A stretch of 64,000 nucleotides of DNA from Kudoa neothunni (lineage: Eukaryota > Animalia > Cnidaria), in assembly GCA_964304625.1 (NCBI GenBank), contig OZ199838.1, positions 8,953,045-9,017,044 on the forward strand, in the 5' to 3' direction. Positions within the stretch are counted from its first letter, which is position 1; each line of letters begins with the position of its first letter. Shown piece by piece: positions 3,349 to 63,870 of the stretch. A program made the position numbers and the translations under genes. Below the pieces are notes generated by a model. That model was not told the origin of the DNA, ran no database searches, and saw only the letters and a list, made by a program, of their open reading frames with translations.

Positions 3349-6201
3349 TAGGGGTGGGCAAACTACTATTCGCGAAAAGGCTCAACACCAGTCGCCAAAA
3401 ATTATGTTTATTTCTAAAAAATTTAAATTTATATACCTAATTCTCATAATTAAAATGTTTATTTTAGTTTAATGAACTTTAATGTTCATTGTATTTAATA
3501 GTTTTAAAATAATTCATCACAAACGTCATGCCTAAGTGAATTAAGTATTAAAATTCTAATATTGCTAAAAACAATCGTTCCAAAGGAGAATATAGTTAAA
3601 AAAATAAGAAATAATTTCATATCATAATGTAATTTCTAAATATTATCTTTTACGTTTGGGCTATAAAGGGATCATCGATAAAAGGACTATATATATTAAA
3701 ATGATCTCAAATATCTAATAAATAACATCAGTCATAAAAATTAAAAAATCACTCCTTATTTGTCCTCTGGAGCTAATTAATTGTGATATAGTAAACTCAC
3801 TATAAATTATTTTCTACCAACTTTTAAAATCGCAATGTAGACTTCGTTTAACCGGTATTCATGGATCTACTGATCGATGAGCTGTTTCTATTCAAATTAT
3901 GTCGGGTTTTATATACATAGGGATAAATAATTTTTACCATAATTAAGTGATGTAACTAACAAAACATAACGCTCTCAAAAAAAGGTGAAAAATAAGCCGA
4001 AAGAGGACATTATAAATAGCGGTTACCCCTTTTATACCCTTGCCGAAACATTCTTTAGTATACAATGTTTTTTGAGATGACTAGTTTCAATCAATCTAAA
4101 AAAAGAAAAATTGAAGACTAATGTCGAAGTTTCAATCACGAATGGGCTGAAAAGTACTTGTTTAACAACATAAATAATAAAACTGTATGTTTGACTTGCC
4201 GTGACATACTCGCTGTTTACAAAGAATAAAACTTGAACACCCAGTATCAGACTGAATATTCCAATTTGTCACAGGAAGAATTGAAAAATAAGGCATCTGA
4301 TATAGTACGAAATTTAAAACGAAAAGCAAAATTCATTTGAAAAAGCAACATCCATACAAAGAGATGCAACGGTGACTAGCTATATGCTTTCCCAAAAATT
4401 AGCAAAATGTAACAAGGCATTATTGGATAGGGAGTTTATTAAAGAGTTTTTTATGGATGGTGTTAACGTTGTGTGTGCCCCCAGTCATCTCGAAAATTGA
4501 AACTATTCCTCCATCATGAAGAAAAATCGTTCGAAAAAATTATTAATTTTGAGTACTATTCTATTGGTTTGGACGAAAGTGCATATGCTACCGATACCGC
4601 TCAATTACTCATTTTTGTAACAGGAATTGACCATAATTTCGAAATTAACGAGGAGTTCTTTATCACTTGAATCTTTGAAGAATACCAAAACTGGACAAGA
4701 TTTTTTCGATAGCGTTATGAATAGTTGGAACAGTTCTGGTTTAAGCTTGGACAAACTCATCAATGTCACTACTAATAGAGCACCTTCACTCGTGGGAAAA
4801 CACTCTGGGCTAATAAAACTGACGAACGATAAAATCAATGAAGATTTCCCATCACATAAAATTTTGTTATTTCATTGTATCATACACCAAGAAACATTGT
4901 GTAAATATTCATTGACATTCAAGCATGTTTTGGACCCTGTAGTGTGTGCTGTTAATGTGGTAAGATCAAGGGCTCTTCTACATAGGCAATTTAGGAGCTT
5001 TTTAGAGGACAACGAATCTGATTTTACCGATATACTCCATTACACTAATGTACGATGGTTAAATATGGATCCTAAAAACCGAAATTTCCCCCTTTTTGAA
5101 CATAACGGACACTAGTTGCGATTTTGTTGATAAAATCAAGAATCATGCATGGTTACGTGATTTCGCATTCGCAGTAGATATGATGAAAAAGATGAATGAC
5201 TTGAAAGTAAAATTACAAGGAAAGGCTTATTTGTTCACGAGTTATATTTGGAAGTGGAATCCTTCCAAATAAAACTTCAGTTATTTTCCAATCAACTTAA
5301 AAATCAAAACTTTGCCCATTTTCCAACATTGAAGGTTCAAAATCCCCCAAAACATTTCGTGACAACTATAGTTCCCAGCTAATAGAGTTTAAAGAAGAGT
5401 TTGCCAGAAGATTTTCCGATTGTAGGTTGAACGAAAGTGACTTTACTTTGCTCTGTTCGCCTGTAACAAGTGACATTGAAACATTCCCAGAAGAACTGCA
5501 ATTAGAATTAATAGACCTGCTAGCCGACATTTCCCTAAAAAAACATTCGAACCAAAAAATTTGATTAAATTTTACTCTGCTACCAACAATGAAAGTTCCT
5601 TAATTTGATAAGGTTTGCCAAAGGAATGTTTTTTATTTTTGCATCAACATATATACGCAAGAAAACGTTCTCTGTAATGAAAATAAACATGTCTCAAAAT
5701 AGAGCGATAATGACAAACTTCAATCTTCACTCGATTTTGAGAATAAGTATAAGCTCATTAAAACCTGATTTTGATAAAAGTATTAATGATAGCTGCCAGT
5801 TCCATAAATCGCATTAGTTCTTTTTATTTAATAGTATGTTTTTTATGATGTCTGTTTTTATTTGTCTGCGAATGAAAAACTCTACCTATTAAATTAAATT
5901 ATTATAGAAAATTTTATAACTAGAATACTTTACGTTGTTTTTAAGAAGACAAATTATTTCAAATTTTCGGAATAAGGCCTATTTTAAAAGCTCATACGAT
6001 TTTGAAATTTATCCTTGTGTAAGTAATACTTAGGGTTGTAATAAGTAAAAATATTTAGGAAAATATTAAAATTTATTTTAATCAATGGAAACATGCAATC
6101 GATAAAAAATGAGTTCTAAAACATTTTCCATCTTTTATCATTACAAGAAGCTATTTTTTATGGGTGCGGTCCGCGGACCAATAAAGTTTTCCCCACCCCT
6201 G
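3349..6201 (+). mobile_element. hAT (Buster/Charlie, GTF2IRD2-like) transposon with a disrupted transposase
   Basis: TIRs TAGGGGTGGGCAAACT (3349) and rc CAGGGGTGGGGAAAACT (6201). Flanks atcTActa/tttTAcaa fit the Buster nnnTAnnn target. Transposase ~4077-5817 shows KKRKIED*CRSFNHEWAEKY, SIGLDES..TDTAQLLIFV, FHCIIHQE, VRWL and FASTY..TFSVMK, with stops and frameshifts. Confidence 0.92.
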
Positions 6202-10466: not shown

Positions 10467-13400
10467 TTAAAGAGCATTAATGAAATTCCGAGGATCAGTA
10501 TATTGTCGTTTCCAGGTCCAAATTAATATCAGAAATGGCGGAACCAATGATATAATAGACAACACAAAAGTTGTTATTATAAATGCGTATTTATGTCCAT
10601 CTGAAAATAAGAATTTTCTTTTAATTTTATCGTCGCGGAGGTTCGATTTGATAATCGTAGACCAAATAGTTTTGATAGTTTCGGCGTAACTGACACTGCC
10701 TTTGGAGTAAATTATTGATGTTATGGAAGTAATGTCAGGCGTAAATGACGATGAAGTTGTTTCTGAGACTTTGCTAATAGTTAAGAATACCACTGAAGTT
10801 ATTGATTTTTGTTGTTCGCTGTGGAAATATAAGAGCAAAAAATAAATGGTATTTACCTGATAGTCCCTTCGATATCCAAAAATATGGAACCGAAAAATGA
10901 GTCAGCAAATAAATATATGTACATGTTGTTTTTATATAAATTTGGCCTTAAAACATTGATGCACATTTATATTAATTAAAAAATGTACATACTCTGGTCT
11001 AAGACGTATAATGGTATCTTGGTCTTCCAATAAGGAGTCACTTAGCAGTGCGTAAATTACGCCCAAATTGAAGCATTCAAGCAAATGATTTTTAACTCCC
11101 TAAAGAGAATTTTGAGTTGAACCATATTTAGAGGCATTCTACATCATTTTTTATTCTTGAATTATAGGAGCACTTTTCAGCTCCATACTTAAGTAATGCT
11201 CGTTTCAAGCCACTATTTTTTATCCCCTCAAAATTAAAATAATCATTAAAAATCTACATTTAATCAGAAAATCTCCGTTTAAATGTAATACGTGGATTTC
11301 TTTGATCTCTTTTGAGATAATTTTTTTATTAACAGTTGAAAAATTACAGGGTTTTTCGTTTTGACACACATTTCTATTGCGTATAATGGATTTGATCAGT
11401 ATGCTGCAGGCCTCAATGTTAAATTTTCCAAAAAATATAGCATTGACTTTGTTTATTGGTTCCATTATACAGTCGTGACTTATACTTCCCATGTTAACGT
11501 GTTCGTTAAAACCATTTATAACACAGGGGTGAAAAATCTCTAGGTTATTGTAGCTAGTGCCTGAATTTAGTTGTTCCTATTTATTCATATTTATTGTTAT
11601 TAGTTAAACATTTGCATACTCTAGTTAGTTGGTGATACGTTTCTAGAATTACATTGTCCACAGCCAAACAATAGAATTCATTTACCAATGCCGAGTATTT
11701 TTGACTTCCGATGTAAAATTTCTTTACAATCCAATCATCATATAGTTGCGGATTATTTGTTAAAAACCCAATAGAGAATTTTTTAAAGGATAATCTGATA
11801 AATGGTGTTGACACTAAATTCTATCAGAAATTATTAATAAATATGTATGATACCAATTTCTCTGTCTTCTACCTTATAATTATATTTTAAAAGGTCAATC
11901 AAACCACTGATTTGTTCGTTTACTCTAAACTGACTATTTAAGTTATCCTGTAGTTTTTAAATTGGGTAATCTTCTCTGTGTCTTTATCCAAAATCTTGTT
12001 GTATTCCTCTTCAGTATAACTTTGAATAAAATTTTAATTCTAAATAAGATTTAAAAAGTATACTTATAGCTGAATTCCAACGAATAGACATAATTCAGCA
12101 CGACTTCGTGTTTTTCATTAGTATCCCATTCACATTCATTAGCAGCTTCACGAACGCACCATTTTATTGCCCAATCAACTAACAAATATTAATATTTTTG
12201 ATATAGTTTCATATTTATTAAAAATCATGTTTTTATCTATTTGGCTAAAAAATTTTTATGGATCAATTAAATTCGTATTTTATTGCGAAGGCATGTGTAG
12301 TGTTGATATATCTCCAATCGGAAAGCCAACGTGTGCACATAAAATAAATGAAACGGTTAAGCTTGCAACGAGTTTTTGCCCAAATTTATCCATAATAAAG
12401 AAATGAATTTAATGAGAGTTTTTATTTTCACCTTAAAACTTCATTAATTCAAATATTTTTTACTGAAAAATTTAATTTATATGTTATTATAAAGCTTTAT
12501 CCAACAAATTTTAACCAAATGGAGTTTTGCGCGTCTTTTACGACACCTTAAAAATTTCGTCATATTTTTTAACTTAAATATATTAGAAGTGCGCCACTTG
12601 GGGCAATCTTAAAAATATATAGACATTTTATAGTAAATAATTAATTCTACCATCCCTATATCATTGGACTTTTACGTTAGATGACTTTTGAGTTCAATAC
12701 CGCGGATTTTTTTTCTTTCGCATAATTTTCTGAATTTGTTTAATGTATATGTACAAAAAATCTTAAATTAGATAGATAATACGAAAATATAGTAATTTAA
12801 AATATGATATTTACATTGATCTCACATTTATTACGAAATCACCTTCGGGGTAAAACCACATAGGAGGGATTTCTAATTCGTGCAAAAGACCTTCGGTTAT
12901 AAAAATTAAAATAATATTAATTTTCTATTGATTAAATAAATCTTTTGAGTGGAATTAAATTTGTCCGTGATGTATTGAAACTGCGAAGCTAAATATTGTA
13001 ATATCGATGTTTTTTGCTTTAATTAATAATGAACTTTTTTTGTACAAATAGTGTTATTATTACAGAGAGATTCATTATTATTGTCTTTCTAAATCAGCGG
13101 ATATTTACTTCAGAACGTCAAAATAGCTGAACATGAATCACATTAATTTTTTTAAATAGTTTTAATACACATTGAGGTCGCCTTAAGGAGGAACTGGTTA
13201 AGGGTCATATAAATATTTGACAATGCTTTATCATTTATCTCGTAACAATAGATGAATTATTTAAAAAAATATAAATAATAAATTTTATATAAAATTAAAG
13301 TCGAAACATAATGTTATTAGACAATTCATTAGATTTATATTGATAAAAATACAGTAAACGATGACATTTAGCTTTCAAATCACGCTCATGAAAAAACTAA

Positions 13401-16066
13401 TTGTTACTCAATGAAAATTATTATAATAAAATATTTTCTTTCGGCACTTTAAAAATAGTATTAAGCTGATTTAGCCTATAAAATAACAGGTTAATATTAA
13501 AGTTAGCTGTAAAAATTTCATTTAAATTTAATTGCGCCTATAATTTTTCGTGGTAAATAATTTTGATAATTTAATTGCGATTAACAAAAGTATCTTAAAT
13601 TAACAACATATTAATGAAGAAAATATTTACATTCCCTGCTAATTTAATGTAAATTATGTTACGAATAGGCATGACTAAATATTCTAAGCATGAAATTATT
13701 GTAAAATATTTTGTTAATTGTATTATTAGTTTGAATAAAAATAACCGAAGAAAAAATTCTAAGGACAATTTATTATTTTTTTTACATCGGAGTTGTATAA
13801 ATATGACGCGTTATTTCTTGTCCCACAAAATCTAGTAACACCTTCACCTTGATCAAAATATGTAAATTATCATCTTTTATGCATAATCATTGATTTTTTT
13901 AATTTATAAATCCTATTATTATGGAATACAGTCGTTTAAATTTGTTTGGATTAAATATTCATAATTATAGATTTTAACTAAATGTAATAACGTTCGTGTA
14001 ACGTACATAGTGTTAATGAAACAAAATAATTTTAATAAAATTTATTACTAACTAAGCTTCGTTCTTGCTATGGTTTTGAGCTAAACTTCTGTAGAAAGAT
14101 AAAGATACTACTTGAATTGCATAAATAAAGGCTATAGAATACGTAATAGAATAATTTGTTTAATTTACTATGTTCACATTGGCATACATAATCGCAAAGA
14201 TAACAAAAATTTCATAATTGTAATAAAAAAATATTATGATTACTACCGGGTTTTTACTCAGAATACGGACTGTGTGGAATTCAAATCCGGATTTGGAGTG
14301 ACCAAGATGCCTAAAAGAATCGAAAATCCAAACTCAACTAGCGAAATTTCGTTATATCTTGTCATTCAGAAGGGTAAATCACCGAAATAAGTTTCTCAAG
14401 ATTTAAAAATTCCACGCTCTACACTGAACGATATTATTAAAAAATACGACTTAAGTAAACTCACTTAAAAGATCAAAAGAGTAGAACAAAAAACACCAAA
14501 TTAACGAGTGATGTTCAATAAAGGCTTCTTTCTATCATTGTGGATGATCGCACTATCACTCTGAGAGGAATTATTGAAAAACTTGGAATACAAGTCTTCA
14601 ATTCTACCTTATATAAATAACTTAAAAAGTCAAATATAACTTTTCAAATGACGAGGCCGATTCCTAAGAGTAGAAATTGTTCTAGCGTAAAAGCAGAAAG
14701 GTTAGAGTATGCCAACTGGTATACTGGAATCCCCCATCAACTTAATATAGCGGTTTTTTCGAGTTGAGTTTGGATTTTCAATTCTTTTAGCCATCTTGGT
14801 TACTCCAAATCTGGATTTGAATTCCACGCAGTTCGGATTTAGAGTAAAAACCCCGGTATTATTTCATTCATTTACAATAATTTTTTTAATTGTTAGGACA
14901 AAGTGTGAATACATCTAACTATGAGAGAATTTTAATACAAATACCTTGGTATAATTAAAGCGAAAATTCATATCTATTTTTGTGCAACCTGCCATTAATT
15001 CGGAACGGAGGTGCTAATGGTTAACAGCTTATAACCTATGCTTAAAAAACCGTTAATCATAAAAAAACAAAATCTTACGAAATTATTGTTAAATTTTAAT
15101 GTAATACGTTTTTACTGTATGTAACTTACGAGGTTTTGTAGTTATTCCGTTAATTCCTTATTGAGAAATATTCTCCTGTTTTTTATATTTATTATATTCA
15201 AATCGAATTAGTGGCGTATAGGGTAATGCTAATATTTAGTTATTTAATTTTTTTAATCAATTTAGGAAAATTTCCTACATTTAATTCAAATTTTTGATAA
15301 TCGTTTACGTTAATTATTGGATTAATGGAATAAGTGTTAAGTATATATTATACAAATAAAAAACAAATAATTATAAGTACATAAATTACATATGGATAAA
15401 AAATTTTTAACTAAACAAAAAAAACTATTTTTTTAATGTTAAAATAACTCCATAGTAGGAGATTAATAAAAGAAGATCGTCGGGTCAAAGTAATTAGTTA
15501 TCGGTTATTATTCAATGTTTTAATACATGGCTTCAAAAAGTTTGTCGCAATAAATAATGGTCATAATAAGTAATGTAAATTTTGGTTTTTTAACTAGTTA
15601 GAGTACAATCATTGCTCGTCAGTCAAAAGAGGATGCGTGAGAGAATTTACATGAAAACCCCGTTTTACAATCACCTTTATTCTTTCGTTTATTATAATTT
15701 TCTCAATCAATCAAAATAATTTTGTAATTCAGTTTAAAAAATACGATTACGAAATTTTCTGTAGAAAATATTTGGATTCCGCATCATGCGTGTACAAAGA
15801 TATATTACGTGAACAGTGTCCAATATGGATGTTCAATTTGTCTACCAAATCCTTTTCATCATCATCAAGCAATTTTATTCTGTCGTAACAAATGAACACA
15901 TCCTGAGTCATTCCTTTGACTACCACTATTCCATACTTATGAATTTAGTTTAAATTTTGGAGTAAAAAATAGTAGTAATTACTTGTAAATTTTGATTATC
16001 CGTTGAAACTAATAAAGCGCACAACAAGAAACTTTTAATAATATGGTAAGCCAATGGTTTCGTCAT
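10467..16066 (-). CDS. Divergent NTPDase/CD39 (GDA1_CD39 fold)-like membrane protein, probably catalytically dead
   Basis: Exons 16066-15983, 15935-15809, 15758-15751, 15681-15651, (3472-nt intron), 12178-12064, 12019-11983, 11947-... down to the stop at 10467. Product: hydrophobic N-terminus, Q|YGIVVVKG, KWCVREA, KYSALVNEFYCLAVD, HPCVINGF, GKFNIEACSILI, CQNEKPCNF, LECFNLGVIYALL, Ser/Thr-rich stalk, C-terminal TM. These blocks are collinear with CD39. One intron needs a GA donor. Confidence 0.65.
14246..14856 (+). mobile_element. Internally deleted Tc1/IS630-like element with ~100-bp TIRs and TA TSD
   Basis: TA|CCGGGTTTTTACTC...CTCAACT (14246-~14340) is mirrored at ~14760-14856|TA. It encodes a disrupted transposase N-terminus (MPKRIENPNST...LKIPRSTLNDIIKKY...DDRTITLRGI...RNCSSVKAERLEYANW) and lacks the DDE core. 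It lies in the long intron of the NTPDase-like gene. Confidence 0.9.
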
Positions 16067-27400: not shown

Positions 27401-29868
27401 TATCATAGACTGTGTTACATTAACCTTGTAGGAAGTTAGTTGTTTGTTATTTCTGTGTTTATGAGTATGCGTTTAATAAGTATCGTTAATATTTCATTTT
27501 TTTAAATTTTTGTTCGATATATTTACAGATGATATTATTATTGTTTAATAGGATTGATTATATTTTTGAGTTTTTGTAGAGCAATGTTTCCCAACGTGGG
27601 ACGTGAACAATTTTTTGTGGAGTATAGAAATTTTTAAACGTTTAATGAATCGCTCTAGTGGGACGCGGAAAACCCTGAGTATTGGCGTATTGGTGTGGCA
27701 CGGATAATGATGATATAATTGGGCAGTATGACGTATTTTGAAATTACCATCACGATTTTCGATATCGATAATTTTGGAGTGGCGATTAACATCACAAAAA
27801 ATTTTGAGAAATATTCGGCACGGAACTTTTTTTTTCTGGAAAAAGTGGGACGGGATACAAAAAAGATTGAGAAACACTGATGTAGAGATATCCAAAAATG
27901 CTAATTTTATCGTATTCTCATAATTTATTTGATATTTACATTAATATCGTTATCTTTTCATACTTAAATTAACAATTTGTTATTTGAATTTAAATTTTCA
28001 TAATAATTTATTTTATAATTGTATATTTAGTCTATAATTTAATTTTCCGAAGCATTGTTTTTTAATTTATATGTATCTGGTTATTAAATAAACATTAAAT
28101 TTTCTTTTTAGATATTTAAAAGGTTTATTGAGTCTGGACTTAAGAGTGTTTTTCTTTTTCTCAATATTATTGTTTTGGAATACACATTGGATTCAATGGG
28201 ATTATTTTCAAATCTGAGTCAGTACATCTCATCTCTTAGTATAAATTTAAATAATGGCTACTTTTTTTATACAAGGCTCCAAGAATAATTGATATCAAGT
28301 TCGAGACTTGCTGATGTTTAGTGGCGTAGAGTTAGAATATCGTCATTTGTATGTTTGGATAATTTATACTTATTTTACTTATAATTTTCATTATATTCAA
28401 ATGAAAATACATTTGTTTAATAAAAATTTATTCCGACACGTAAATTTGAGATTTGAAGAGTTGAGTTAAATTTTTATATTCCGTAATCACATGGGGATAT
28501 TTTACTGACTGAACATCGACCTACCTAAAAAATTTCTATTTGATAAAATTAATGTATTTTAGAGTGTATCTTCATTATTGCAGCTATAAAAAATCACTTA
28601 ATGATGATATTTAAAATCTTGATTTTCTCCAAATTTGGTTAGATTTGCTGTAAAAAGCGTTCCATAAATTATATGTATGCAGATTATTAAAATGATTAGA
28701 AAATATTTTTAGGCAACTTAATTTGTTAAAATCTCAAATTTTGTTATTCCCGCATCTTTCAAGACTTGGGAAAGTAGATTAAGCATGTAAATCCAAGATT
28801 ATAAAACACTTAATTGAAGATTTTATTAAAAGGGATTATTTATTATATGATTAACATTACAAATTTCAAATAGAGTCAATATATTCCAGCCTTCTTTATT
28901 TTATTTTTTTGAATTTCCTGACTGTGATATTATTTGTTTTTAATTTCTATTTAACAAAACAAATTCTAACTACCAATTGATAATTTTTATTTTCAACCTT
29001 ATTTGATGTACCCTAGTTTTCAAAAGTTGCAGTAATATAAACATATTAATTTTTAATAAAGACAATTTTTGACCGAAACTAATTTCGTATTTTTCAGGAG
29101 CTGTCGTTAGTGTCGACTGTGTGAAAAATCCTGTAGAACTGGCATACAAGGTGATGAAAGAAACTCCACATTGTATCTTGGCTGGCGAGGGAGCAAGAAA
29201 ATTTGCTAAAACCACTGACATTCCAGTGTGTGAGAATTCCCATGATCTTGTTTCAAAATCGCAATTGGAAGTTTTCCACAAAACACCATCTTTCAAGGAA
29301 TGGATAAAGAGTGATATGGCAAGCGCTTCAGGTGTTCTTCGTAGCGATGGTGAACATGACACTGTCGGAGCTGTTGCATTGGATTCGTATGGAAATTTTG
29401 CTTGTGCTACGTCAACAGGTAAATATATTCATCCCAATAGTTATAGCAACCCTAGTATTGTAGGTGGCATCAATGGAAAAATGTTGGGAAGAATCGGAGA
29501 TTCTGCAATTATTGGATCTGGTGGATATGCCAATGAATTCGGTGCGGCGGCAGCCACAGGACACGGAGAATCTTTTCTCAAAGTTCTTGCTTGTTATTCG
29601 GTAGTCTTCTTGCTTTACGTTTAAATCTCTTATTTTATTTGAGCAGGCTGTTGAAAAAATCGAAAATGGCGAAAGTCCATGCGCTGCTGCATCCACCGTC
29701 CTAAAAAAAATAAGTCACGTTCTAAAGAGTAAAGGTGGCATTATTTCGGTCAACAAAGATGGAGATATTGGTTATGCGTACACTACCGAATTCATGCCGT
29801 GGGCAGCATATGATAAAAATGGCCATCTTCGGAACTCTCTGAAAGATAAAAATAACCTTGAGAATTAA
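24457..29868 (+). CDS. ASRGL1: Isoaspartyl peptidase/L-asparaginase (Ntn hydrolase), 6 exons
   Basis: Exons 24457-24468, 24508-24618, 24658-24805, 29098-29418, 29464-29600, 29647-29868. Motifs IAHGGA, LENNPLFNAGYGS, VEMDSMIM, HD/TVGAVALD (autocleavage Thr), ATSTGG, GRIGDS, TGHGE and MPWA. Confidence 0.95.
26116..27412. mobile_element. Tc1/pogo-type element in ASRGL1 intron 3
   Basis: TA|CAGTAGATGACGGGTCGTTCGTAA ... TTACGAACCACCTATCATAGACTG|TG. Both ends align with the MITE at 31360-31599. Confidence 0.8.
27582..27879. mobile_element. hAT MITE in ASRGL1 intron 3
   Basis: TTGTAGAG|CAATGTTTCCCAA ... TTGAGAAACACTG|ATGTAGAG (TSD 7/8). Shares TAGAAATTTTTAAACGTTT.ATGAATCGCT...CCTGAGTATTGG with 19382-20068. 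Confidence 0.85.
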
Positions 29869-41347: not shown

Positions 41348-42971
41348 TTAGTTATACCAACACAAAAACCAATACGAAGTACATTCCCTTTTCACATCCT
41401 TAGAGGTTGGATTAGATCCAGCATGGGCCGACTTCAAATCATCATCAGTAGATTTGGTATCAACGTCAACAACTGTTAGCCCTTCTTTACTTAAAGAACC
41501 ATTTGGTTCCATAGTGTTCTCTTCTCTGATAACTTGAGTTCCTGGATTATTATCGACATGCTGCTCAACGACTCGAGTGGGTTCCTTACCGGAATCGCCA
41601 CTATCATCAACAGTGGCGGCAGTCAATGGCGTTTTGCAAATTGCTAAGCATGCTCCTTCGTTTTCAAAGTTATTCAAGTTCATTTCTTTTCCGTTAGATA
41701 TAAATTTCTGACAAGTCTTTGCATTATCGCCAGATGTTTCGTAGTAAAATCGATCTATTTTGTATACATCATTATCACTAGCAACTCCAATCTTTGGTTG
41801 GTTACACACATCAACACCTTTAAGTTCACCAACGTGAGCAGCTATTTTTAGAATTTTAATGTCGTTATTAAGTATTGAACTTTTCTTGATAGAGAAATAC
41901 TTGCAGGACAAAAACTTGCGCATAGTTCGACTGAGCTAAATATATTATTTTCACCGTCGTTAACTTTGACGGTTTGATTAGGTGGTAAAGTCAAAAAAGG
42001 GAGGCAAGCTTTTCTTGTTTTGTTAAAATAATAATATTCTTTTAATATGGTTTGATCAATAACTTTATTTTGAGGTGGCAATTGGTAGGGGCTGGTTGCA
42101 TTGCAAGCAGCGACGTAGTTAGCTATGTGCGATTATGACAAAGATCTTAATACAATGAGTACTTATGCATGTATCTACGCATGTTGGTAGATCATCAAAA
42201 TAACCTCTTTTGGCATCCATACCCACAGCGGCATAAACACATTTCTTTTTGTCTTTATGGAGGATAATTCCCATTTTTGGCGTTTCGTTGTCTATTTCTG
42301 CTGAAAAAAGACAATCAAACTCATTAGGGACTTTTGTCAATTCTTCATCCCTAGTTTCACCATCAACAAAACCGTTTCTTTTATCTTAAAGGATTTATAA
42401 ACAATTCGTCCTCAAATTATATATGCTTACTTTGGCATGCATTTTTACATTCAGTTTCGTTTTCAAAATTATTGGCGTTCCCACCACATCCACTGTATTT
42501 AAATTCGTGACAAGAGTTTTTAGCACCACCGTTGACAGCAGATTTGGAGTAAAACCATCTAACCAATTTATTTCCCCCAGGTGAATTACACAAACCTGGG
42601 GATTTTTCTAATTTACACGCATTTGACTTTTCTTCCGGTGTGAATTTAACTAGTAGTAGCATCAATCAATGTAAATAACATATTAATTACGATGGTTCTC
42701 ACATACCGCTTTCGACACAAAATTGTTAAAATTTCCAAGGGACCCCAGATATTTAAATGGTTTGCATTTGGCGGTATTAACGTCGACATACCACCTATCA
42801 ATTACAGCTGCATCTTGTTGCTCTTTATTCATCCAGGAAGGAGGAGCACCGACATCCAATTTATAAGAATCCAAAACTCGTTCTACAATAAAATAATTAT
42901 TACTTATAATAAATATTGAGATAACCGAGTGAAATAGTTGTTATAAAAGAAAAAATTATCCAAATAATCAT
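41348..42971 (-). CDS. Secreted multi-Kunitz (BPTI-fold) protein with five domains and an acidic tail
   Basis: Signal exon MIIWIIFSFITTISL, then one Kunitz-like domain per exon joined by phase-1 introns: RWY..CKPFKYLGSLGNFNNF; RWFY..CHEFKYSGCGGNANNF..EC..AC; KKCV..YFDDLPTCVDTC; YYF..KAC..NIF..LCASFC; RFYY..TCQKF..NLNNFENEGACLAIC. Confidence 0.9.
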
Positions 42972-45744: not shown

Positions 45745-47662
45745 TTCTAGAATAAATTTAAAAATTAATCTTAATGCATTCATTTCGTAATTTTCGTTAG
45801 GCCCCGTCTAAATCATGTGAAGACGTCATTCGTGTAATAATATTATTGGTTGTTTTGTCATCAATTTTTTTCTACTCAAAAAATGAGATATGAAAAATTT
45901 ATTTAATTTATAATCTGTTTTAATTCTACGAGGTGGGGCGGTAAAGCAATAGTTTATATTAAGACTATTCAACCTACAAGGTCTATCACTCGCTATTTTC
46001 ATGTAAAATCGTAACTGTGTTGTCTTTCAAAGTAACATATTTTTATGCTTATACTGTATTTAGGTTGTCGGTATCGTTATCTACTTAGAAATACGTTTTG
46101 CGTAGCTTTGAGTTGTTTAAATAACAAAAAAATTATTTCTAATCTGATTTCTGCCGGTATCTCTCAGGGACCCCATGGGCACACGCGGAATTTTTTTGAG
46201 ATCGGTACAGGAAGGGTTAATAAAATCCATAATTTCGCCAAAATAATACCAACCCGAACTAACTTTTCTACCGCACCGTACATTAATCAGCTTTTCTTGG
46301 CAATTCAAACCTTGTATTTCACAATTCTTGTTATTCTGTTGTTGGAGCATAGAATCATCTAGTTATCGACCAGCAAAATAAATTTCACTGAGGGAAAACA
46401 CTACAGTATAATTTCTACAACATAATAAAGCACAGTTCTCGATATTATCTCTTTTGTTTTCAACTAATACCTTACTAGTGTTCATATGAAAGATTAGTAA
46501 GGATTATGCAGGGAAGGCTTTCGTTCATGAATGTCGCATTATTTTCGACACACCTGATTAGGAGTTTAGCATCTTAAATAATCTAAAAAGACATAAACAA
46601 ATTACAATTACTAATTATTTTAAGCCAAAATTAATCTTTGTTTTTATGTATAATTGTGCCCAGCGCGGATTTCACCGTATTGCATAATTTCTCTCGATTG
46701 CGAATTTTTTTTCCAATCTAAAAAAGTATCGCAATATCCAGGGTCGCCCAAATATTGTAAAATTACTCCATTTTTTGTTTGTTGAACACACGCTGAAGTA
46801 CACAAGATTGGTCGATAATGCGGTTCTGGCAAATTTTCTTCAGCCCGAGGAGATTGCCAAAAAATAACTTACTATACTTATTGAAGGTATTTTTAAAATT
46901 TATTATCATTCACCAATTTTCAAGTATTTACAATAAAAAGGTAAATCAAATTGTTCATTCACACCATTTGAGATGTTTTATTAAGTACAATTAATAGAGA
47001 CAGGTTGTTTTGAAGCTACGTTAAAGCAGGGTTTTATAACTTACGTAATTCAAGGGAACGCCTTTAAGACACATACCATGAGTCAGCAATCTTTAAAAAT
47101 ACAATGAGGTGAATATAGAATAAACAGTGATGAGCCAATAAAAACAAGTGACAACATAGTTAATCCGAATTTTAAACTATGTCGCTACCTTAACTTCAAT
47201 CATCACAGGATATAGCGTCCCTCGTTATTATTACAATAGCAAAAATATTTGCGAAATGAATGTCAATAACAAAACAACAATACGAGTCGATATTACATTA
47301 GCACATGTTAGCAGCAAAGAAAGCCATGAATCTTTTCAAGTCTATTTACAGAATTTAAATTGATCGATTCAATTAAATTATAAAAAAAATTTATCAAGAT
47401 TTAATAAACGCAAAGTAGAATAAAAATTATTGTTCGGATGGCCAAGTTTTCTAATTAATCAAGTGACACCCACCATTCATACAATGATAAGGATTATGCG
47501 CAGGTTGTCGTTGTCAGATTAATATTACCCCCACACAGTCTGTTCCTATACAGTGAAAATAAAGTTATTTGAATGAGAGATTCTGTTTCATTTATATGAT
47601 TAATATTTTAGGATTCATAAGAGGTGTAATTGGGTATTTTGTGAAGAGTCGAACATTTCGAA

Positions 47663-48735
47663 ATGGTGTCTGATTTTATTTCGGGATATATAGGAGGTAG
47701 ATATAATTCTGTGTGATGAATTTTATTTAATTGTTTGTGCTCCGAACCCCTTATTTGAATTAAAATGGCATTAATAAGAATTATAATTTGTTAAAGGTTT
47801 AGCTGGAGTGGTAGTAGGTCATCCGTTTGACACGATAAAAGTGTATATACAGACAAAAAAGTGTCACTTAGGCGCTATTGGAACATTAAAAACAATCGCC
47901 AAACAAGAAGGAGTAATTTCAACTATTTGACTTTTGCATCATGATCTACTGACATAACCAAACAAATTTAGGTCCAGGGTCTATTTAAAGGCATGACTTC
48001 TCCACTTTATGGGACTGCGTTTCTTTGTAGTATATTATTTGGCGTCAACGGGATTTGCACTAAAACCATGCCTGAAAATGTAAGGAGTACCCCAAAAGGG
48101 CAATTTGTCGCGGGAAGTATAGCAGGATTTTCCCAAAGTTTAGTGACTTGCCCAATGGAATTGGTAAAAATTCGGATGCAACTCAACAATGCCAATTGCA
48201 CCGGTTCTACGAACACTCCAAGAACAACTCTCATGCAACAAACTGCTCAAATAATCAAAGAAAAGGCTGGATACAGAACCCTCTTCAGGGGTATGGCTAT
48301 CACGTTTTTACGCGATACTCCCGGGTTTGGAGTGTATTTTGCTACCAACCAATACATCATAAACAAATACAAAGCATCATCGATAGGTAGTAATTTGGGG
48401 GTGGTTTTTTGAATGAAAATTCGATGTTAGAAAGAAACCCATGTAACGATATGATATGTCAATTTGTGGCTGGGGGATTGGCTGGTGTTGCTTCGTGGGT
48501 TCCAAGCTATCCATTCGATGTTGTCAAAACACGCATTCAAAATTGTGTAGACCCAACCGTCGATACCAGATTTATACCTTACTTGCGAAGTCTCATAAAA
48601 AGCGAAGGTGTCGCCGTGTTGACAAGAGGGATGACAACTCAATTAGTGCGAGCATTTCCTGTCAATGCCTTCACATTCTGTGGTACCGCTATCGCCGCCT
48701 CTATGCTTGGCATGACTTCTCCGTTCCTTTTATAA
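47663..48735 (+). CDS. Mitochondrial carrier, SLC25A29/45/48-like (basic amino acid/carnitine type), copy 1
   Basis: Exons 47663-47696, 47797-47912, 47972-48386, 48431-48735. Three Px[DE]xxK signatures (HPFDTIK, CPMELVKIRMQ, YPFDVVKTRIQ), plus RDTPGFG and RAFPVNA. Confidence 0.93.
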
Positions 48736-55178: not shown

Positions 55179-58034
55179 CAGTGGAGGGCACAAAATGCGG
55201 CCCGCGGACGGGTTTAAAGGATGAAAAATTTCGTTAGCATTTACGTGTTTTCGAAATCTAGTAACGCCAAGACAGCATTTGTCTTACATAAATAAATAAA
55301 AAACTTTTTGATGAATATTATGGATTTTTAAAAGTTAATTTTACGCGATTTTAAACTATAATTATTTATAATAGAGGTGTATCAAAATTTATCATTTTGA
55401 AGTGGGAATAGTTTTTTTATTCATTTACTTAATTTCCTCGAGTGAGAACTCGCTCAAACTTCCCTTGTTAATTGTAATTGTCGACTCCACGTGTTTGTAG
55501 AATTAAACAAACATGCCCTCCCGAAAGCGTACAGTTGTTGATGAAAACCGTAATTTTAATGATGATTGGACTCACGAATATTTCTTCACCAATTCAATGA
55601 ATAGAGCGATGTGCTTGCTTTGTCTCGAATCGGTCGCCGTATTAAAGGGATATAACTTGAAATAGCATCACAAAACGAAATCTCTAATCCAAGAAAACGA
55701 ATCTGGAGCAAGTTTTATGATATCATATAACATTGCTCGGCGAAACAAACCATTTTTAGAAGGCGAATTTGTGAAAGGGTGTTTAATGAATTGTGCTAGC
55801 GTTGTTTGTCCGGAATTGAAAAAAAAGTTTGAAAATATTCTATTATCAAGAAGGATAGTTGTGCGTCGTATAGAAATGATAAGTGAAAATTTAAGCCAAC
55901 AGTTAAAAGATTAAGCAAAGATTTTGTGTGTTATTCATTGGCTTTAGATGAAAGCACAGATATTAGAGACACCGCACAATTGCTTATTTTTGTACTCGGA
56001 GTAGACCCTAATTTTTGTATCACTGAAAAATTACTTTCTATGGAACCGATGAGAAGTACAACAACTGGGCAAGATTTGTTTGAATGTGTGGTTAAAGCAG
56101 TTGAAAACAATGAATTACCTCGGAGTAAATTAACAAGTGTAACAACTGATAGCTCTCACTCTTTATTGGGAAAGAATTTGGGAATGATTAGACTTTTGAA
56201 TGAAAATCTTAAAAAAAGTGATTCTGAACCATGCTTTTCTGTCATTTCCCGGTATTTTGCATCAAGAAAGTTTGTGTAAATCTGCATTAAGTTTAAGCCA
56301 CATTGTAACTCCAGTTGTGAACACAATAAATATAACTCGTTCAAGAGCTCTGAATCACCGTTAGTTCAGATCGTTGTTAAATGATCTTGATTCTGAGTAT
56401 GGACATGTTATCTACCATAACAATGTACGATGATTGAGTTTAGGAAAAGTTTTGAAAAGATTTGATTATCTGGGAGACGAAATTAAGGCTTTTCTTAAAA
56501 TGAAAGATTTTAATAGTGAGTTTATCCATAATATAAACTGTGATGAATGGAGGTTTGAGCTTATGTTCGCAGTTGACTTCTTTGAAATCTCAATAAATTA
56601 AACCTAAAGTCGCAAGGTAAACAATTCATGGTTTATGAAATGTTCAACCACATTAAATCTTTTGAAGCGGAACTATCTCTTTTTATAAACCAAATAAATG
56701 AAGGGAAATTTACTCACTTTCCATTGCTTGCAGAAGAAAAAATGCCTCCAACTATTGGTTTTAAAATAAAAAGCCATCTAAAATCTTTATTAGATGAGTT
56801 GAATAGAAGATTTAAAACTTTCGACAGGTTGAACCAAAATTTCAAATAATCACATCGTTATTCTCTATTGATGCCAACACGACTGTCGACTAGCTTCAGC
56901 TTGAACTGATAGATGTTCAGTTTGATAGTTTATTAAAAGAATTGTTTGTTGTTGTTCCATTAGTATAATTTTACAATTAGTTACCTGTTAAGAGTTTTCC
57001 ATGCCTTAGAAATTTCGTTACAGGAATATTTTCTATGTTTGGGTCAATCTATATTTGTATTTGTGAGCAAAGTTTCTCCTGTATGAAAATTAATAAAAAC
57101 AAGAATAGGTCTTTGCTGTCAAACAAAAATCTAGAGGCCGTATTCAGGATATCTTGAAGCAACCTAAAACCGAACCTTAAGCTATTAGTTCATGAAAATA
57201 TTTAATGATTTTTTTCCTTTTAATTTTCGTTTTATCAAGCGTCCCAAGTGCAACACTAATCACTTCAGAGTTGAAGTCTTACGATAAATATAATTTTTAT
57301 TAATTGATATAATTAGAGGAAATTGAAATAAATAATAAAAAGTAGGGAATAATAAGTTATGTTAACTCTTCCTGGTGGAATTATTATTATAAAAAATATA
57401 TTTACAAAACCTTAAAAGATGAATGTTACATCGATACTTACCAAAAATTAAGATTTTTTTTAATTTCATGTAATTTTAATCATAATTTGGGATTGTAATA
57501 TTCCCTAATAAATTTTTATAAAATTATTTCTGTAATTTGATTATATTTGTCACGAAAAATTTAATGTAATCTGAAATATTATAAATCTAATTAATTTTTA
57601 TTAGTTTAATTATATTCAAATGTATAATTTAGGTCTCGTTTTAAAGTACATGTTATATTGAATTTGATGCTTAAAATAATTATAAATAATTGTATCAGTG
57701 TCATTTTTTAAATATTTCATGTGTAGTTAATGAGTAACATTAACTTTTCATAACTTTAGTTATAATTAAAATTTATTAAGTATAAAACCTATTATTTCGA
57801 TTGGAACTTGCAATAGTATGTCGATCACAAAACTTTTATATTTATATTTATAAAAATTATTTAATTCTTTTTTTAAACTAATCTGTAGACCAACTTGTTT
57901 ATTGTACCAAAAATGTTAGAAAAGCCACCAATAGGTATTTAAGTTATCAGAAAACACTTAATCAACAGTTTGGCCCCTAAGCATCTGTAATGAGCCAATG
58001 TGGCCCGCAGATCCAATAGTTGGGCCCACCACTG
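55179..58034 (+). mobile_element. hAT (Buster, GTF2IRD2-like) transposon with a disrupted transposase
   Basis: TIRs CAGTGGAGGGCACAA / rc CAGTGGTGGGCCCAA and subterminal GGCCCGC. ORF from 55513 reads MPSRKRTVVDENRNFNDDW, KPFLEGEFVK, SLALDESTDIRDTAQL, CEQSFSCMK, with stops. TSD not conserved. Confidence 0.9.
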
Positions 58035-59940: not shown

Positions 59941-60143
59941 TAGTAATTCTTGGAGCACTCGGAAGATTAACCAAAACTATACACCGATTTGCTTCACTAC
60001 GATCCCGCTCTCAATATTTACGAAGGCTACCGAATTTTAAACCAAACGCAAGGGCCTTCGATATTGGGACGATAAAACCGATAACTTTCGGCGTCTGATT
60101 CAAAAACAATTGAATATATTTTCGAATAGTCAAATATCATAAA

Positions 60144-61199
60144 ATGGGGTCCGAATTTATTTCAGGTTATATAGGAGGTAGATGTTGAAATGTTCTCAAT
60201 GCACCAGTTGATATTGTTCAATTGAATCGCATTTTTAGTTTGATTCGTTCATTAATTAATATTATATTTGACAAGGTTTGACTGCAGTAGTGGTAGGGCA
60301 CCCGTTTGATACTGTAAAAGTGTATATGCAGACTAAAAAGTCTAAGTTAGGTGCATATGGGACGCTGAGGGCGATCATTAGACAGGAGGGGGTAGTTTTT
60401 CACTTTAAACGAGTCCAAATAATCGACACGAGTGAATGAGTAAATTTAGGTCCGAGGACTATTCAAAGGGATGTCATCTCCACTTTTCGGGACTGCATTT
60501 TTGTGTAGTATTTTGTTTGGTGTCAATGGAGTTTGTACGAAAACCCTTCCTGAAGATGTACGCACCATTGTACAGGGACAATTTATTGCTGGAAGTGTGG
60601 CAGGATTTTCACAGAGTTTAGTAACCTGTCCAGTGGAGTTGGTTAAAATTCGAATGCAAATCAAAAATATTGGCATCGCCACCAAAACAACTCTCACCAA
60701 ACAAACACTTCAAATACTTAACGAGAAAGGTGGCTCTAGGACTCTCTTCAAAGGTATGGCTGCTACACTTTTACGTGATGTTCCTGGGTTTGGTTTGTGT
60801 TTTGCAATCAATCAATTCATTTTAAATATATACAAACAATCGGGAATAGGTAATATTATGCCGTATTGTTATTCATAAAATAATTAAACAATAGAAAGAA
60901 GCTTTTTTAATGATATGTTCTTTTCATTTGTGGCTGGCGGTACAGCTGGGGTTATCTCGTGGATTCCGAGCTACCCATTTGACGTGGTTAAAACTCGAAT
61001 TCAAAGCACCACCGATCCATCTATTAATACCAGATTCATACCATATGCACGAAATTTGATTAAAGCTGAGGGTTTCGCTGTATTAAAAAAAGGTTTGATG
61101 ATACAGCTTGTACGAGCATTTCCAGTGGATGCAGTTATGTTTTGTGTTGCTGCGATGACAGCTCGTGCTCTTGGTTGCACTTCTCCGTTCTTATTATAA
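60144..61199 (+). CDS. Mitochondrial carrier, SLC25A29/45/48-like, copy 2
   Basis: Exons 60144-60177, 60276-60391, 60450-60849, 60895-61199. Intron positions and phases equal copy 1. Motifs HPFDTVK, CPVELVKIRMQ, YPFDVVKTRIQ, RDVPGFG and RAFPVDA. Confidence 0.93.
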
Positions 61200-61593: not shown

Positions 61594-62719
61594 TCAATTT
61601 TTCTTGACAGTTTGGAATAGATTGGATAATGTCTCATCTCTACATCGAAAACTGATTTAAATAGTTGTAATCTAAGAGGTTCACCTTATTTCATCTAACA
61701 AAAGGTCTGATTTTGGTGTGGGTGTAGCAAAGTTTCTAATCTTGGAATGTACACGATAACTAAAAATTATAAGTAACCACTACACCAAAATTTATATCTA
61801 CTCAATAAGACGATCTTTATGCGATCTTAGATCTTGTCCCGAAAGAAGAGAGTCTTTGTTTGAATTTTTGTTATTTTTAGTGTTATTGGATCTGCTCTAA
61901 GTGGAATAAAAATAAATAAACTCATCTCAAACGTTCTAATGCTACAAGAATGTCTCCTGAAATATTTTGAAAAAAGTCGTGATCATCAAAAATTTTTTCC
62001 AAATCCTCGTCGAAAAATGATGACTCTACCTAAATATACACAAAAAATCATAATTGTGAGTTCATCCTAACTTGACAAAACTACATTTTTTGGGGTCAAT
62101 GGATTTTTAATTATGCGTGAGTGGCCAACAAAGTCATCAATTTTGCTCATATCATTTTCCATTTGGTTTATTGTATTCAGTTTAAATCCAACAAACAACT
62201 ATCACCAAACACATTACAATGCGTTATGATTGGCCAATCAAGTTACGTCACCAGGATTATTGTTTGAATGTTTGTTCAATAATTCCATAAGGTCGGTAAA
62301 ATAATCTAAGTGATTTCGAATTGATTGTTGATGGATAGTTTCAAGTTGATTGTCCAAATTCTAAAATATGAATTAAATAAACATATAACAATCTTTCGTG
62401 GTTAATATTCATATTCGACCATCGAATTACATTTATATCGAACTCCAAATGGTTCGAATTAATTTTATTCAAGCTTAACCACAATTCTTGTTGTAAAGTG
62501 ACCAACCGATCGGTCATATCGCATCGGGGGAGTTGATTGCATAAACTTTGAATGTTTTGTAAGGATTCCCAACATTTCAACGATTTTAACCACAAATCTT
62601 TATCACATAGCTTATAATTAAAATATAAATTTATTTTATCTACGATTTGAGGCTTTATGGGGTTTATTTTCGAGAATTATCCTCTCCCCGAACTCCATAC
62701 TACCACCAAGCATGCGCAT
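61594..62719 (-). CDS. AATF: AATF/Bfr2 (SSU processome factor), short form, ~8 exons
   Basis: LWLKSLKCWESLQNIQSLCNQLP matches the AATF N-domain LWD.LLE.RI.LQ......NQLP. IFDDHDFFQ and DLRSHKDRLIDYRVHSKIRNFATP...ETLSNLF match the TRAUB domain. Start is at 62719 or 62698. Confidence 0.8.
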
Positions 62720-62886
62720 TGAAATATAAATTAGCACTTAGATTTTTGTTTGACATCGAATTGCTCAATATAATTTTTTTTAAACTATTCAAAGTAATTA
62801 AATGCAGATTGAAAATATTTTTACGAATAATAGAAATCGTTTATTATCCGAGTAAGAACGAATTCAAGAAGTGCAACAGCCCTAGT

Positions 62887-63660
62887 ATGTACAAACTCAA
62901 GTGTAAAATTTTTGCTCACGATAGTGATGTGAGAACAATGAGTGTAATCGATTCCAATAAGATTGTAACTGGATCGCGCGACTCATCCTGTAAAGTGTTT
63001 CAACGTATAGATGACTCGAGCGAATTTGACCCAATACACTCGGTGACAACCGATCGAAAATACGTCAACAGCTGCAAAAACTTTGTGTCTGAAGGGAAAA
63101 ATTTTTACATTTTTGGCACCGGCCTTAATGTGCTCTACGTGTACAATGAAAATTTTGAATTGTTATACTCACTTGAAGGTCATTCTCAAAATGTATCATG
63201 TATTGACTATTGCTATCGAAAATGTCATCTTGCAAGCGGTTCTTGGGATTGTCGTATCAATATTTGGGATATGAATTTGGCAGGGAAACTGATTAATACA
63301 TTGCAAGGTCACGAACAAGCTGTCTGGTGTGTTAAATATGTTCCTGGTTTTAATTTGTTATTGTCCGGTTCTGCGGACAAAACTATTCGTCTTTGGAAAA
63401 ATTATAACCATGTAAAAACTTTCATCGGCCACAAACATGCTGTCAGAGATATTGCCGTTTTGGATGATAAACGTACGTTTCTCTCATGCGGTAACGATAT
63501 GATGATTATCAAATGGGATATTATTGGCGGAACTTCTCTTCAAATCCTCGGTCACCATACCAGCTTTATATACTCACTTGCGTTGATTGGTGACAGTGGT
63601 TTCGTGTCCGCTGGTGAAGATGGCGAATTAATTGTTTGGGACGACATGAAAAAACTACAA
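62887..63660 (+). CDS. PLAA: PLAA/Doa1/Ufd3 WD40 protein, first exon (continues beyond the window)
   Basis: MYKLKCKIFAHDSDVR...IVTGSRD, LEGHSQNV, SGSWD, LQGHEQAVW, SGSADKTIRLW, GHKHAVR, SCGND, HTSFIYS, SAGEDG. GT donor at 63661. Confidence 0.88.
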
Positions 63661-63870
63661 GTATTTATATTTTTTAAATTTATGTATTAAGCATTTATTA
63701 ATAACTGTTTAATGTTCGGCGAATAAAAATAAGGTTGGTCGTTTATGCTATTTTAAGAAAATAAAAAATGGCGCGAAATCGATCGCTTGCCCAAATTATT
63801 TTCGGTATGCGTATGTTGTAATAATTCTTGTTGAATTAATCTTCATTGCTTTTGAAATTTTTTAAAAAAT

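What the first reader, a model, noticed from the sequence alone, without database searches (positions are those of the whole stretch)
10467..16066. Hidden CD39/NTPDase-fold surface protein with all five apyrase motifs erased (candidate pseudo-enzyme)
Seen: exons spread over 5.6 kb splice into one protein with a hydrophobic N-terminus, a Cys scaffold (GHC...KWC, FYC, HPC, EAC, C.....C.F, EKC, LECF), a Ser/Thr stalk and a C-terminal TM. Known: this order matches CD39-type ecto-apyrases, whose catalysis needs ACR1 DAGSS, ACR2 ATAGMR, the ACR3 Glu, ACR4 DLGGAS and ACR5 W.LG. The aligned positions here read VKGMT, YVYSLE, unclear, RLSFKK and FFGS. Inference: a fold kept without catalysis, possibly a nucleotide sensor, decoy or adhesin at the host interface.
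Basis: partly seen in the sequence, partly recalled or inferred. Interest (0 to 1): 0.8.

Follow-up and report, generated by a model that had tools for sequence, protein, structure and literature searches.

The report
Dead apyrase-like parasite surface protein
This gene of a fish-muscle parasite (very probably the myxozoan Kudoa neothunni) encodes a membrane-anchored protein that descends from the ATP-splitting enzyme CD39 but has lost every catalytic motif; it is one of about 40 such genes kept under selection, so probably a large, undescribed family of non-enzymatic surface proteins, although this copy carries one frame break that may be real or an assembly error.

Summary
A ten-exon gene (16066-10467, minus strand) encodes a signal peptide, a CD39/NTPDase-derived ectodomain, a Ser/Thr stalk and one TM helix. 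All five ACR motifs are replaced; the catalytic Glu of ACR3 reads Ser. Homology rests on Pfam, profile-profile and Foldseek hits, eight conserved Cys, and seven intron phases shared with fish NTPDase3 and two intact-motif ecto-NTPDases of the same genome.

Two corrections. Exon 2 ends at 15809 and joins 12178 directly, so 15701-15651 is intronic.

The gene is not a singleton: about 43 loci match in this 40-Mb genome (probably Kudoa neothunni), plus two in a probable codfish gut metagenome. No member read keeps an intact ACR. Family omega is 0.25, and this copy's branch is the most constrained. The former phosphate loops are among the least conserved segments, which argues against a nucleotide sensor and for a diversified binding or decoy scaffold (inferred). 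I put the break at about 60-65% assembly error. No RNA check was possible. The scan found this family before on other DNA (s1-690130, s1-701620).

The parts
15983..16066 (-). Exon 1: start codon and signal-peptide-like hydrophobic N-terminus (28 codons)
   Evidence: hydropathy peak 1.52; similar first exons in gA, gC, gK
15809..15935 (-). Exon 2 (corrected end): first beta-strand; ACR1 position reads VKGMT at 15920-15906; ends Cys-Ser plus a phase-1 donor
15651..15701 (-).
   Evidence: phase clash with exon 2; no such exon in compact paralogue gK; 13 of 14 paralogues have the phase-1 intron at residue 70
12179..15808 (-). Intron 2, 3630 nt; holds a MITE-like element (14241-14861, 107-nt inverted ends) and a second dispersed repeat (about 12524-12960)
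12064..12178 (-). Exon 3 (E4 in my notes): helix with KWC and the conserved C-x-W; ACR2 position reads YVYSLE at 12092-12075
11873..12019 (-). Exon 4 (E5): ACR3 position QISG at 11914-11903, catalytic Glu replaced by Ser; contains the single frame break
11938..11956 (-). One-base frame break (best placed near 11942) with a TAA at 11940-11938 in the upstream frame; left as X in all models
   Evidence: paralogues read open here
11620..11820 (-). Exon 5 (E6): ACR4 position reads RLSFKK at 11796-11779; FYC
   Evidence: a paralogue E5-E6 model retrieves only NTPDases in the Foldseek rows listed down to rank 47
11292..11576 (-). Exon 6 (E7): Cys-rich part of the C-terminal domain (HPC, HDC, EAC, C.....C.F)
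   Evidence: Pfam GDA1_CD39 E=5.6e-4; profile vs fish NTPDase3 prob 96.5, E=9.6e-10
11143..11253 (-). Exon 7 (E8): EKC
10993..11099 (-). Exon 8 (E9): LECF
10857..10946 (-). Exon 9 (E10): ACR5 position reads DSFFG at 10903-10889; the family motif is D-P-x-x-G
10467..10818 (-). Exon 10 (E11): Ser/Thr stalk (32-36% S/T), TM helix at about 10586-10518, 17-residue tail, stop codon

Best explanation
The gene belongs to a family of about 40 Kudoa genes that arose by duplication of a cell-surface NTPDase (CD39/NTPDase1,2,3,8 type), lost catalysis, gained a Ser/Thr stalk and expanded by birth and death. Shown: descent, loss of all ACR residues, type I anatomy, purifying selection, copy number. Inferred: the disulfide-braced two-domain fold is displayed on a stalk at the parasite surface. 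Without the two DxG aspartates, the glycine loops and the ACR3 Glu it neither hydrolyses nor specifically binds nucleotides. It serves instead as a diversified scaffold for contact with host or parasite proteins (adhesion, binding of host immune factors, or antigenic decoy), while two intact-motif ecto-NTPDases keep the enzymatic job. This copy was under selection along its whole branch. Its single frame break is more likely an assembly error (about 60-65%) than a very recent loss.
For: Homology: family HMM vs fish NTPDase3 E~1e-17 as a pairwise value, vs the intracellular-type L001 0.07; hhalign prob 97-99, 311-378 columns. Intron phases 0,1,2,0,0,0,0 are shared by this gene, L058, L082 and Danio NTPDase3. 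ACR loss family-wide. Selection: codon-position identity p2>p1>p3, omega 0.252, this branch p2/p3 0.28, the lowest of 14. Copy number: 45 matches. Loops variable while the Cys scaffold is conserved. Assembly noise: 8 single-base homopolymer indels in 9.2 kb between two assembled copies of the adjoining stretch.
Against: No expression, localisation or binding data. The joined protein was not folded or searched. Single exons other than E7 give weak profile scores, and both fragment models are of modest quality (pLDDT 69 and 62; VIA-align Z at most 3). Several paralogues carry multiple breaks (gI/gJ, gN, gF, gO), so real pseudogenes occur in the family. The surface-binding role is argued by analogy only.
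Confidence: 0.6

Rival explanations
1. This particular copy is a recent true pseudogene of the family: the frame break is real and yields a truncated peptide of about 135 residues or a decayed transcript.
For: Break plus immediate stop. The best-placed site is a two-base run, not a long homopolymer. Real multi-break copies exist: gI and gJ, assembled twice, share the same five breaks. Most members show no break at all, so coding-sequence error is not frequent.
Against: No sign of relaxed selection on the branch. Only one lesion in 1.6 kb, and all splice sites are intact. Nearby duplicate copies differ by indels even in 2-to-3-base runs.
Confidence: 0.37
2. Structural or secretory role inside the parasite (spore valve, polar capsule or plasmodium membrane building block) rather than a host-facing role.
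For: Signal peptide, disulfides, stalk and TM fit any secretory-pathway membrane protein. Omega of 0.25 shows constraint, not clear positive selection.
Against: About 40 copies at 30-50% identity with ongoing birth and death are more typical of host-interface families (my knowledge).
Confidence: 0.17
3. Non-hydrolysing nucleotide or phosphate sensor or sink, using new residues such as the conserved Lys at ACR1 and Asp at ACR5.
For: K35 and D408 are conserved in at least 85% of core paralogues, and D-P-R-x-G recurs in most divergent members.
Against: The ACR1 and ACR4 loops that bind the phosphates (PMC12489842) have lost their glycines and are among the least conserved segments (0.35, 0.33 vs mean 0.49). 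D-P at a helix start can be a simple capping motif. Tails are short.
Confidence: 0.1
4. Regulatory partner of the two intact-motif ecto-NTPDases (hetero-oligomer, chaperone or inhibitor).
For: Two intact-motif relatives exist in the genome; pseudoenzymes often regulate active kin (my knowledge).
Against: Forty diverged regulators for two enzymes is hard to explain, and the stalk lifts the domain away from the membrane.
Confidence: 0.07
5. An active enzyme with migrated catalytic residues or a different substrate.
For: A conserved acidic residue three positions before the ACR3 site in many core members; gR keeps E-x-G at ACR4 and h02 keeps GT at ACR2.
Against: Both metal-coordinating DxG motifs, ACR2 Thr/Gly/Arg, the ACR3 Glu and the ACR5 Trp are absent, and no common replacement set exists across the family (91, 108).
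Confidence: 0.04

Closest known systems
Cell-surface E-NTPDases 1, 2, 3, 8 (CD39 family, Pfam PF01150 GDA1_CD39), e.g. Danio NTPDase3 (P0038) and rat NTPDase1/2 structures 3zx0, 3cj9
   Same: Colinear ectodomain over 311-378 columns, eight Cys of the C-terminal domain, first seven intron phases, C-terminal TM.
   Different: All five ACRs replaced; about 13 residues missing after the first Cys; two extra conserved Cys (C44, C86); short signal-like N-terminus instead of a long first TM; Ser/Thr stalk; two family-specific phase-2 introns.
The two intact-motif ecto-NTPDases of the same genome (L058, C3:5.318 Mb; L082, C1:0.885 Mb)
   Same: Same first seven intron positions and phases, short hydrophobic N-terminus and C-terminal TM; group with the family at weak support 74/49.
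   Different: They keep ACR1 (D-x-G-S-T), ACR2 (GTGGLR), the ACR3 Glu, ACR4 (DIGGSS) and ACR5 (WTLG), and have no stalk.
Parasite pseudo-enzyme expansions: scabies mite SMIPP-S and SMIPP-C (PMC9725168), inactive Trypanosoma cruzi trans-sialidase-like proteins (PMC5020489, abstract only)
   Same: Multi-copy, catalytically dead paralogues of a secreted or surface enzyme kept beside active ones.
   Different: Unrelated folds, and their host targets are partly known; here the scaffold is an NTPDase and no target is known. This is a likeness of working, not membership.
Single atypical NTPDases: truncated mt-PCPH/ENTPD5 (PMC3829800, title and abstract only), Arabidopsis APY7 (PMC10824444)
   Same: NTPDase-family proteins with a role not explained by apyrase activity.
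   Different: Single genes, either truncated or with ACRs still present; not an expanded family with all motifs replaced.

Membership tests
GDA1_CD39 / E-NTPDase (as a homologue) | Profile match to PF01150 above the gathering score (24.9 bits) | tested here: inconclusive
   Exon E7 alone scores 19.1 bits, E=5.6e-4; 5 of 16 paralogue exons match, best E=1.1e-4. The joined protein could not be scanned.
GDA1_CD39 / E-NTPDase (as a homologue) | Full-length colinear similarity to NTPDases | tested here: met
   Local hhalign prob 97-99, E 9e-12 to 8e-17, 311-378 columns; family HMM about 50 bits on fish NTPDase3.
GDA1_CD39 / E-NTPDase (as a homologue) | Two-domain actin-like NTPDase fold | tested here: inconclusive
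   Fragments only: the E5-E6 model of paralogue gK ranks NTPDases in every listed Foldseek row down to rank 47, best E=0.011, prob 1.00; the E7 model ranks NTPDase1 at 2-4 with E about 1.3; VIA-align Z at most 3.
Cell-surface NTPDase1/2/3/8 subfamily | Conserved extracellular Cys scaffold and gene structure | tested here: met
   C209, C243, C261, C282, C296, C302, C348, C366 align with NTPDase3 Cys and are at least 85% conserved; intron phases shared.
E-NTPDase (as an enzyme) | ACR1 and ACR4 DxG motifs that coordinate the metal and phosphates | tested here: not met
   VKGMT and RLSFKK; no member read keeps DxG at these sites; role of DxG from PMC12489842.
E-NTPDase (as an enzyme) | ACR2 TAGxR and the ACR3 catalytic Glu | tested here: not met
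   YVYSLE; the Glu position reads Ser in this gene and Ser, Gly, Ala or Asp in core paralogues. The catalytic role of the Glu is from my own knowledge.
E-NTPDase (as an enzyme) | ACR5 W-x-L-G | tested here: not met
   DSFFG; family D-P-x-x-G.
E-NTPDase (as an enzyme) | Divalent-cation-dependent NTP/NDP hydrolysis | not testable with these tools
   Needs a bench assay.
Cell-surface NTPDase1/2/3/8 subfamily | Two membrane spans (N and C terminal) | tested here: inconclusive
   C-terminal TM clear (hydropathy 2.39); the N-terminal segment is weak (1.52) and signal-like; no signal-peptide predictor was available.
Selected pseudo-enzyme family (vs neutral pseudogenes) | Purifying selection and mostly open frames | tested here: met
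   omega 0.252; p2>p1>p3; most members unbroken.
Intact expressed gene (this locus) | Open spliced transcript | not testable with these tools

The most novel reading that the evidence does not exclude
Kudoa-type myxozoans turned the CD39 fold into their main variable surface-protein repertoire: about 40 dead apyrases (roughly 0.8% of predicted proteins) that bind fish immune or muscle proteins, or are expressed in turn as antigenic variants. This would give a first molecular handle on how intracellular muscle plasmodia persist with little inflammation.
Probability: 0.3. Interest if true: 0.82.

Novelty: new variant of a known kind. Interest (0 to 1): 0.6.

Why it matters
Myxozoan genomes are full of unannotated genes, and little is known about their host-facing proteins. 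This gives an identity, an ancestor and a testable role to one large family in a parasite genus that spoils fish flesh. My literature searches found no expanded, fully dead NTPDase family in any organism, and the genome paper does not mention it. The genome also holds two intact-motif relatives and partly decayed intermediates, so it offers a natural series for studying how an enzyme fold becomes a binding scaffold. Intact members are candidate antigens and stage markers. The kind of system (pseudo-enzyme expansion in a parasite) is known; the scaffold is new.

Tried and rejected
Joined step: the spliced model has no reference, so it was not sent to any search or fold tool. Exons were searched one by one, and the joined model (X at the break) was used only inside local scripts. 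Host-to-parasite transfer was considered because the core clade scores higher on fish enzymes than on L058/L082 (85). The careful tree favours a Kudoa origin only weakly (74/49), and no free-living cnidarian sequence was at hand, so this is open but not favoured.
Full report
Source. The window lies on a 40.26-Mb assembly of three chromosomes plus an 18-kb contig, about 29% GC with introns near 45 nt. This fits Kudoa neothunni as described in PMC12239612 (40.2 Mb, three chromosomes, GC 30.4%, intron length 49 bp, 5,316 predicted proteins). The identification is an inference from these figures.

Observation. First, the exon at 15701-15651 cannot follow exon 2 in phase. The paralogue second exons read end near Cys-x, nearly all with a phase-1 GT donor, and the compact paralogue gK has no exon in between. 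The window has the same donor at 15809, which joins 12178 across a 3630-nt intron filled with two dispersed repeats. Second, exon 12019-11873 changes frame once, between 11956 and 11941; the paralogue profile places the break near 11942, followed by TAA. With X at the break the ten-exon model is 539 residues: signal-like N-terminus, ectodomain with 13 Cys in all, a stalk of 32-36% Ser/Thr, a TM helix and a 17-residue tail.

What it descends from. Exon E7 hits Pfam GDA1_CD39 at E=5.6e-4, below the gathering score, and 5 of 16 paralogue exons do too. The E7 profile ranks rat NTPDase1 first among solved structures (E=0.068). It retrieves fish NTPDase3/8 from 1.84 billion proteins at E 1e-4 to 8e-4 and aligns to Danio NTPDase3 with probability 96.5. 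Profiles of E2, E5 and E6 are weak alone but fall in the right order on ACR1, ACR3 and the post-ACR4 strand. A local family profile aligns to NTPDases over 311-378 columns with probability 97-99. It scores about 50 bits on fish NTPDase3, 16-17 on the two Kudoa ecto-enzymes and nothing on the intracellular-type L001. A model of the natural E5-intron-E6 read-through frame of gK retrieves only NTPDases in the Foldseek rows listed down to rank 47 (best E=0.011). The E7 model and both VIA-align searches are weak. Independent of sequence scores, the intron phases 0,1,2,0,0,0,0 are shared at matching positions by this gene, by two intact-motif ecto-NTPDases of the same genome (L058, L082) and by Danio NTPDase3.

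Catalytic motifs. ACR1 reads VKGMT, ACR2 YVYSLE, ACR3 QISG (Ser at the catalytic Glu), ACR4 RLSFKK and ACR5 DSFFG. The DxG aspartates of ACR1 and ACR4 hold the metal cofactor and ACR1-5 bind the phosphates (PMC12489842); mutation of ACRs alters hydrolysis (PMC5803232). The role of the ACR3 Glu as catalytic base is from my own knowledge. Loss of activity is therefore a strong inference, not a measurement.

Family. The E7 profile finds 45 matches, about 43 loci, a few of them duplicate assemblies. Spliced alignment shows the same intron positions in a core of about 15 loci and in about 20 more divergent ones. No member read keeps DxG, TxGxR or W-x-L-G at the ACR sites (one ETGST string in h15 was not located). 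ACR1 was read in 14 core members only. Some divergent members keep traces, GT at ACR2 in h02 and E-x-G at ACR4 in gR. Two members, one with four and one with two matching introns, lie in ENA metagenome assembly ERZ28624939; its record name suggests the codfish gut study PMC7054092 (inference). One of them falls inside the core clade (support 99), so the family, if that DNA is from another myxozoan, is older than one species. In a careful reduced tree all 13 dead members lie on one side of a branch (93/94). Dead plus active Kudoa ecto-enzymes group at 74/49. Long branches, and the ACR columns being in the alignment, make this suggestive only.

Selection. This gene is 29-43% identical to its paralogues, with identity highest at codon position 2 and lowest at position 3. 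Family omega is 0.252 (third positions are near saturation, so this is rough). Its own terminal branch has the lowest second-to-third position ratio of 14 (0.28).

Is this copy intact? Unknown. For error: two assembled copies of the adjoining 9.2 kb (the second after a 200-N gap) differ by 8 single-base homopolymer indels, some in 2-to-3-base runs, and the branch shows no relaxation. For a real loss: most members have no break, while gI/gJ, gN, gF and gO have several, and gI and gJ share theirs. I put error at 60-65%. The joined model was not searched or folded.

How it most likely works. Shown: an NTPDase-derived, disulfide-rich ectodomain on a Ser/Thr stalk with one TM, no catalytic residues, kept by selection in many diverged copies. 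Inferred: surface display, and use as a protein-binding or decoy scaffold. The conserved columns are mostly Cys, Gly, Pro and aromatic or aliphatic core residues, whereas the former phosphate loops ACR1 and ACR4 are less conserved (0.35, 0.33) than average (0.49). A shared nucleotide ligand would predict the opposite. The conserved Lys35 and Asp408 leave a small opening for a sensor role. The closest working analogues are the scabies SMIPPs, some of which inhibit complement (PMC9725168), and inactive T. cruzi trans-sialidase-like proteins (PMC5020489, abstract). Parasite NTPDases have themselves been implicated in adhesion (PMC8630654).

Novelty and verdict. It is a homologue of the CD39 family but fails every catalytic membership test, so it should be filed as an NTPDase-derived pseudo-enzyme, not as an apyrase. 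I found no paper on such a family; the library lacks most subscription journals. Earlier notes of this scan reached the same reading on other loci. I consulted them after forming and recording my own view, and they are not independent evidence. Verdict: a real feature, a new variant of a known kind, interest 0.6.

Noticed in passing
L058 (G000:C3:5317400-5320400, minus) and L082 (G000:C1:883700-886300, minus): Two unbroken ecto-NTPDase genes with all five ACRs, missed by the PF01150 genome search; likely the parasite's active ecto-apyrases and the nearest active kin of the family.
   Followed up: yes
L001 (G000:C2:7277245-7281069): A third NTPDase with intact motifs and a different exon structure, of the intracellular type by its motifs.
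   Followed up: partly
window 14691 to at least 23868 vs G000:C1:9017245 onward (L047, L057): Near-identical second copy starting right after a 200-N gap (8 single-base indels, 3 substitutions and one indel of about 26 nt in 9.2 kb); probably an unpurged haplotype overlap. gI/gJ on C2 look the same.
   Followed up: partly
window 14241-14861 and about 12524-12960: MITE-like element with 107-nt inverted ends (at least 6 other copies, 78-85%; one lies inside the long intron of paralogue gD) and a second dispersed repeat (at least 8 copies, 67-73%).
   Followed up: partly
last exons of core paralogues (L003, L004, L007, L009, L013, L017 and window 10518-10470): Seven of nine intact cytoplasmic tails end in Leu (NAL, YNL, FYL, RDL, YEL, NDL, RDL) although the tails are otherwise unrelated; possibly a PDZ-type or sorting signal.
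   Followed up: no
L055, L056 (ENA ERZ28624939): Family members in what appears to be a codfish gut metagenome, pointing to an unnoticed myxozoan in that sample.
   Followed up: partly
window 41351-41923 (minus): Kunitz domain with a reduced Cys set (Pfam E=3.9e-7); other notes of the scan describe a five-Kunitz protein here.
   Followed up: no
window 29121-29621, 47628-48735 and 60108-61199, 62647-63687: Asparaginase_2 gene, two mitochondrial carrier paralogues (68% DNA identity) and a WD40 gene.
   Followed up: no
window 4627-5115 and 55926-56279: Frames that look by eye like hAT/GTF2IRD2-type transposase fragments; no Pfam support was obtained.
   Followed up: no
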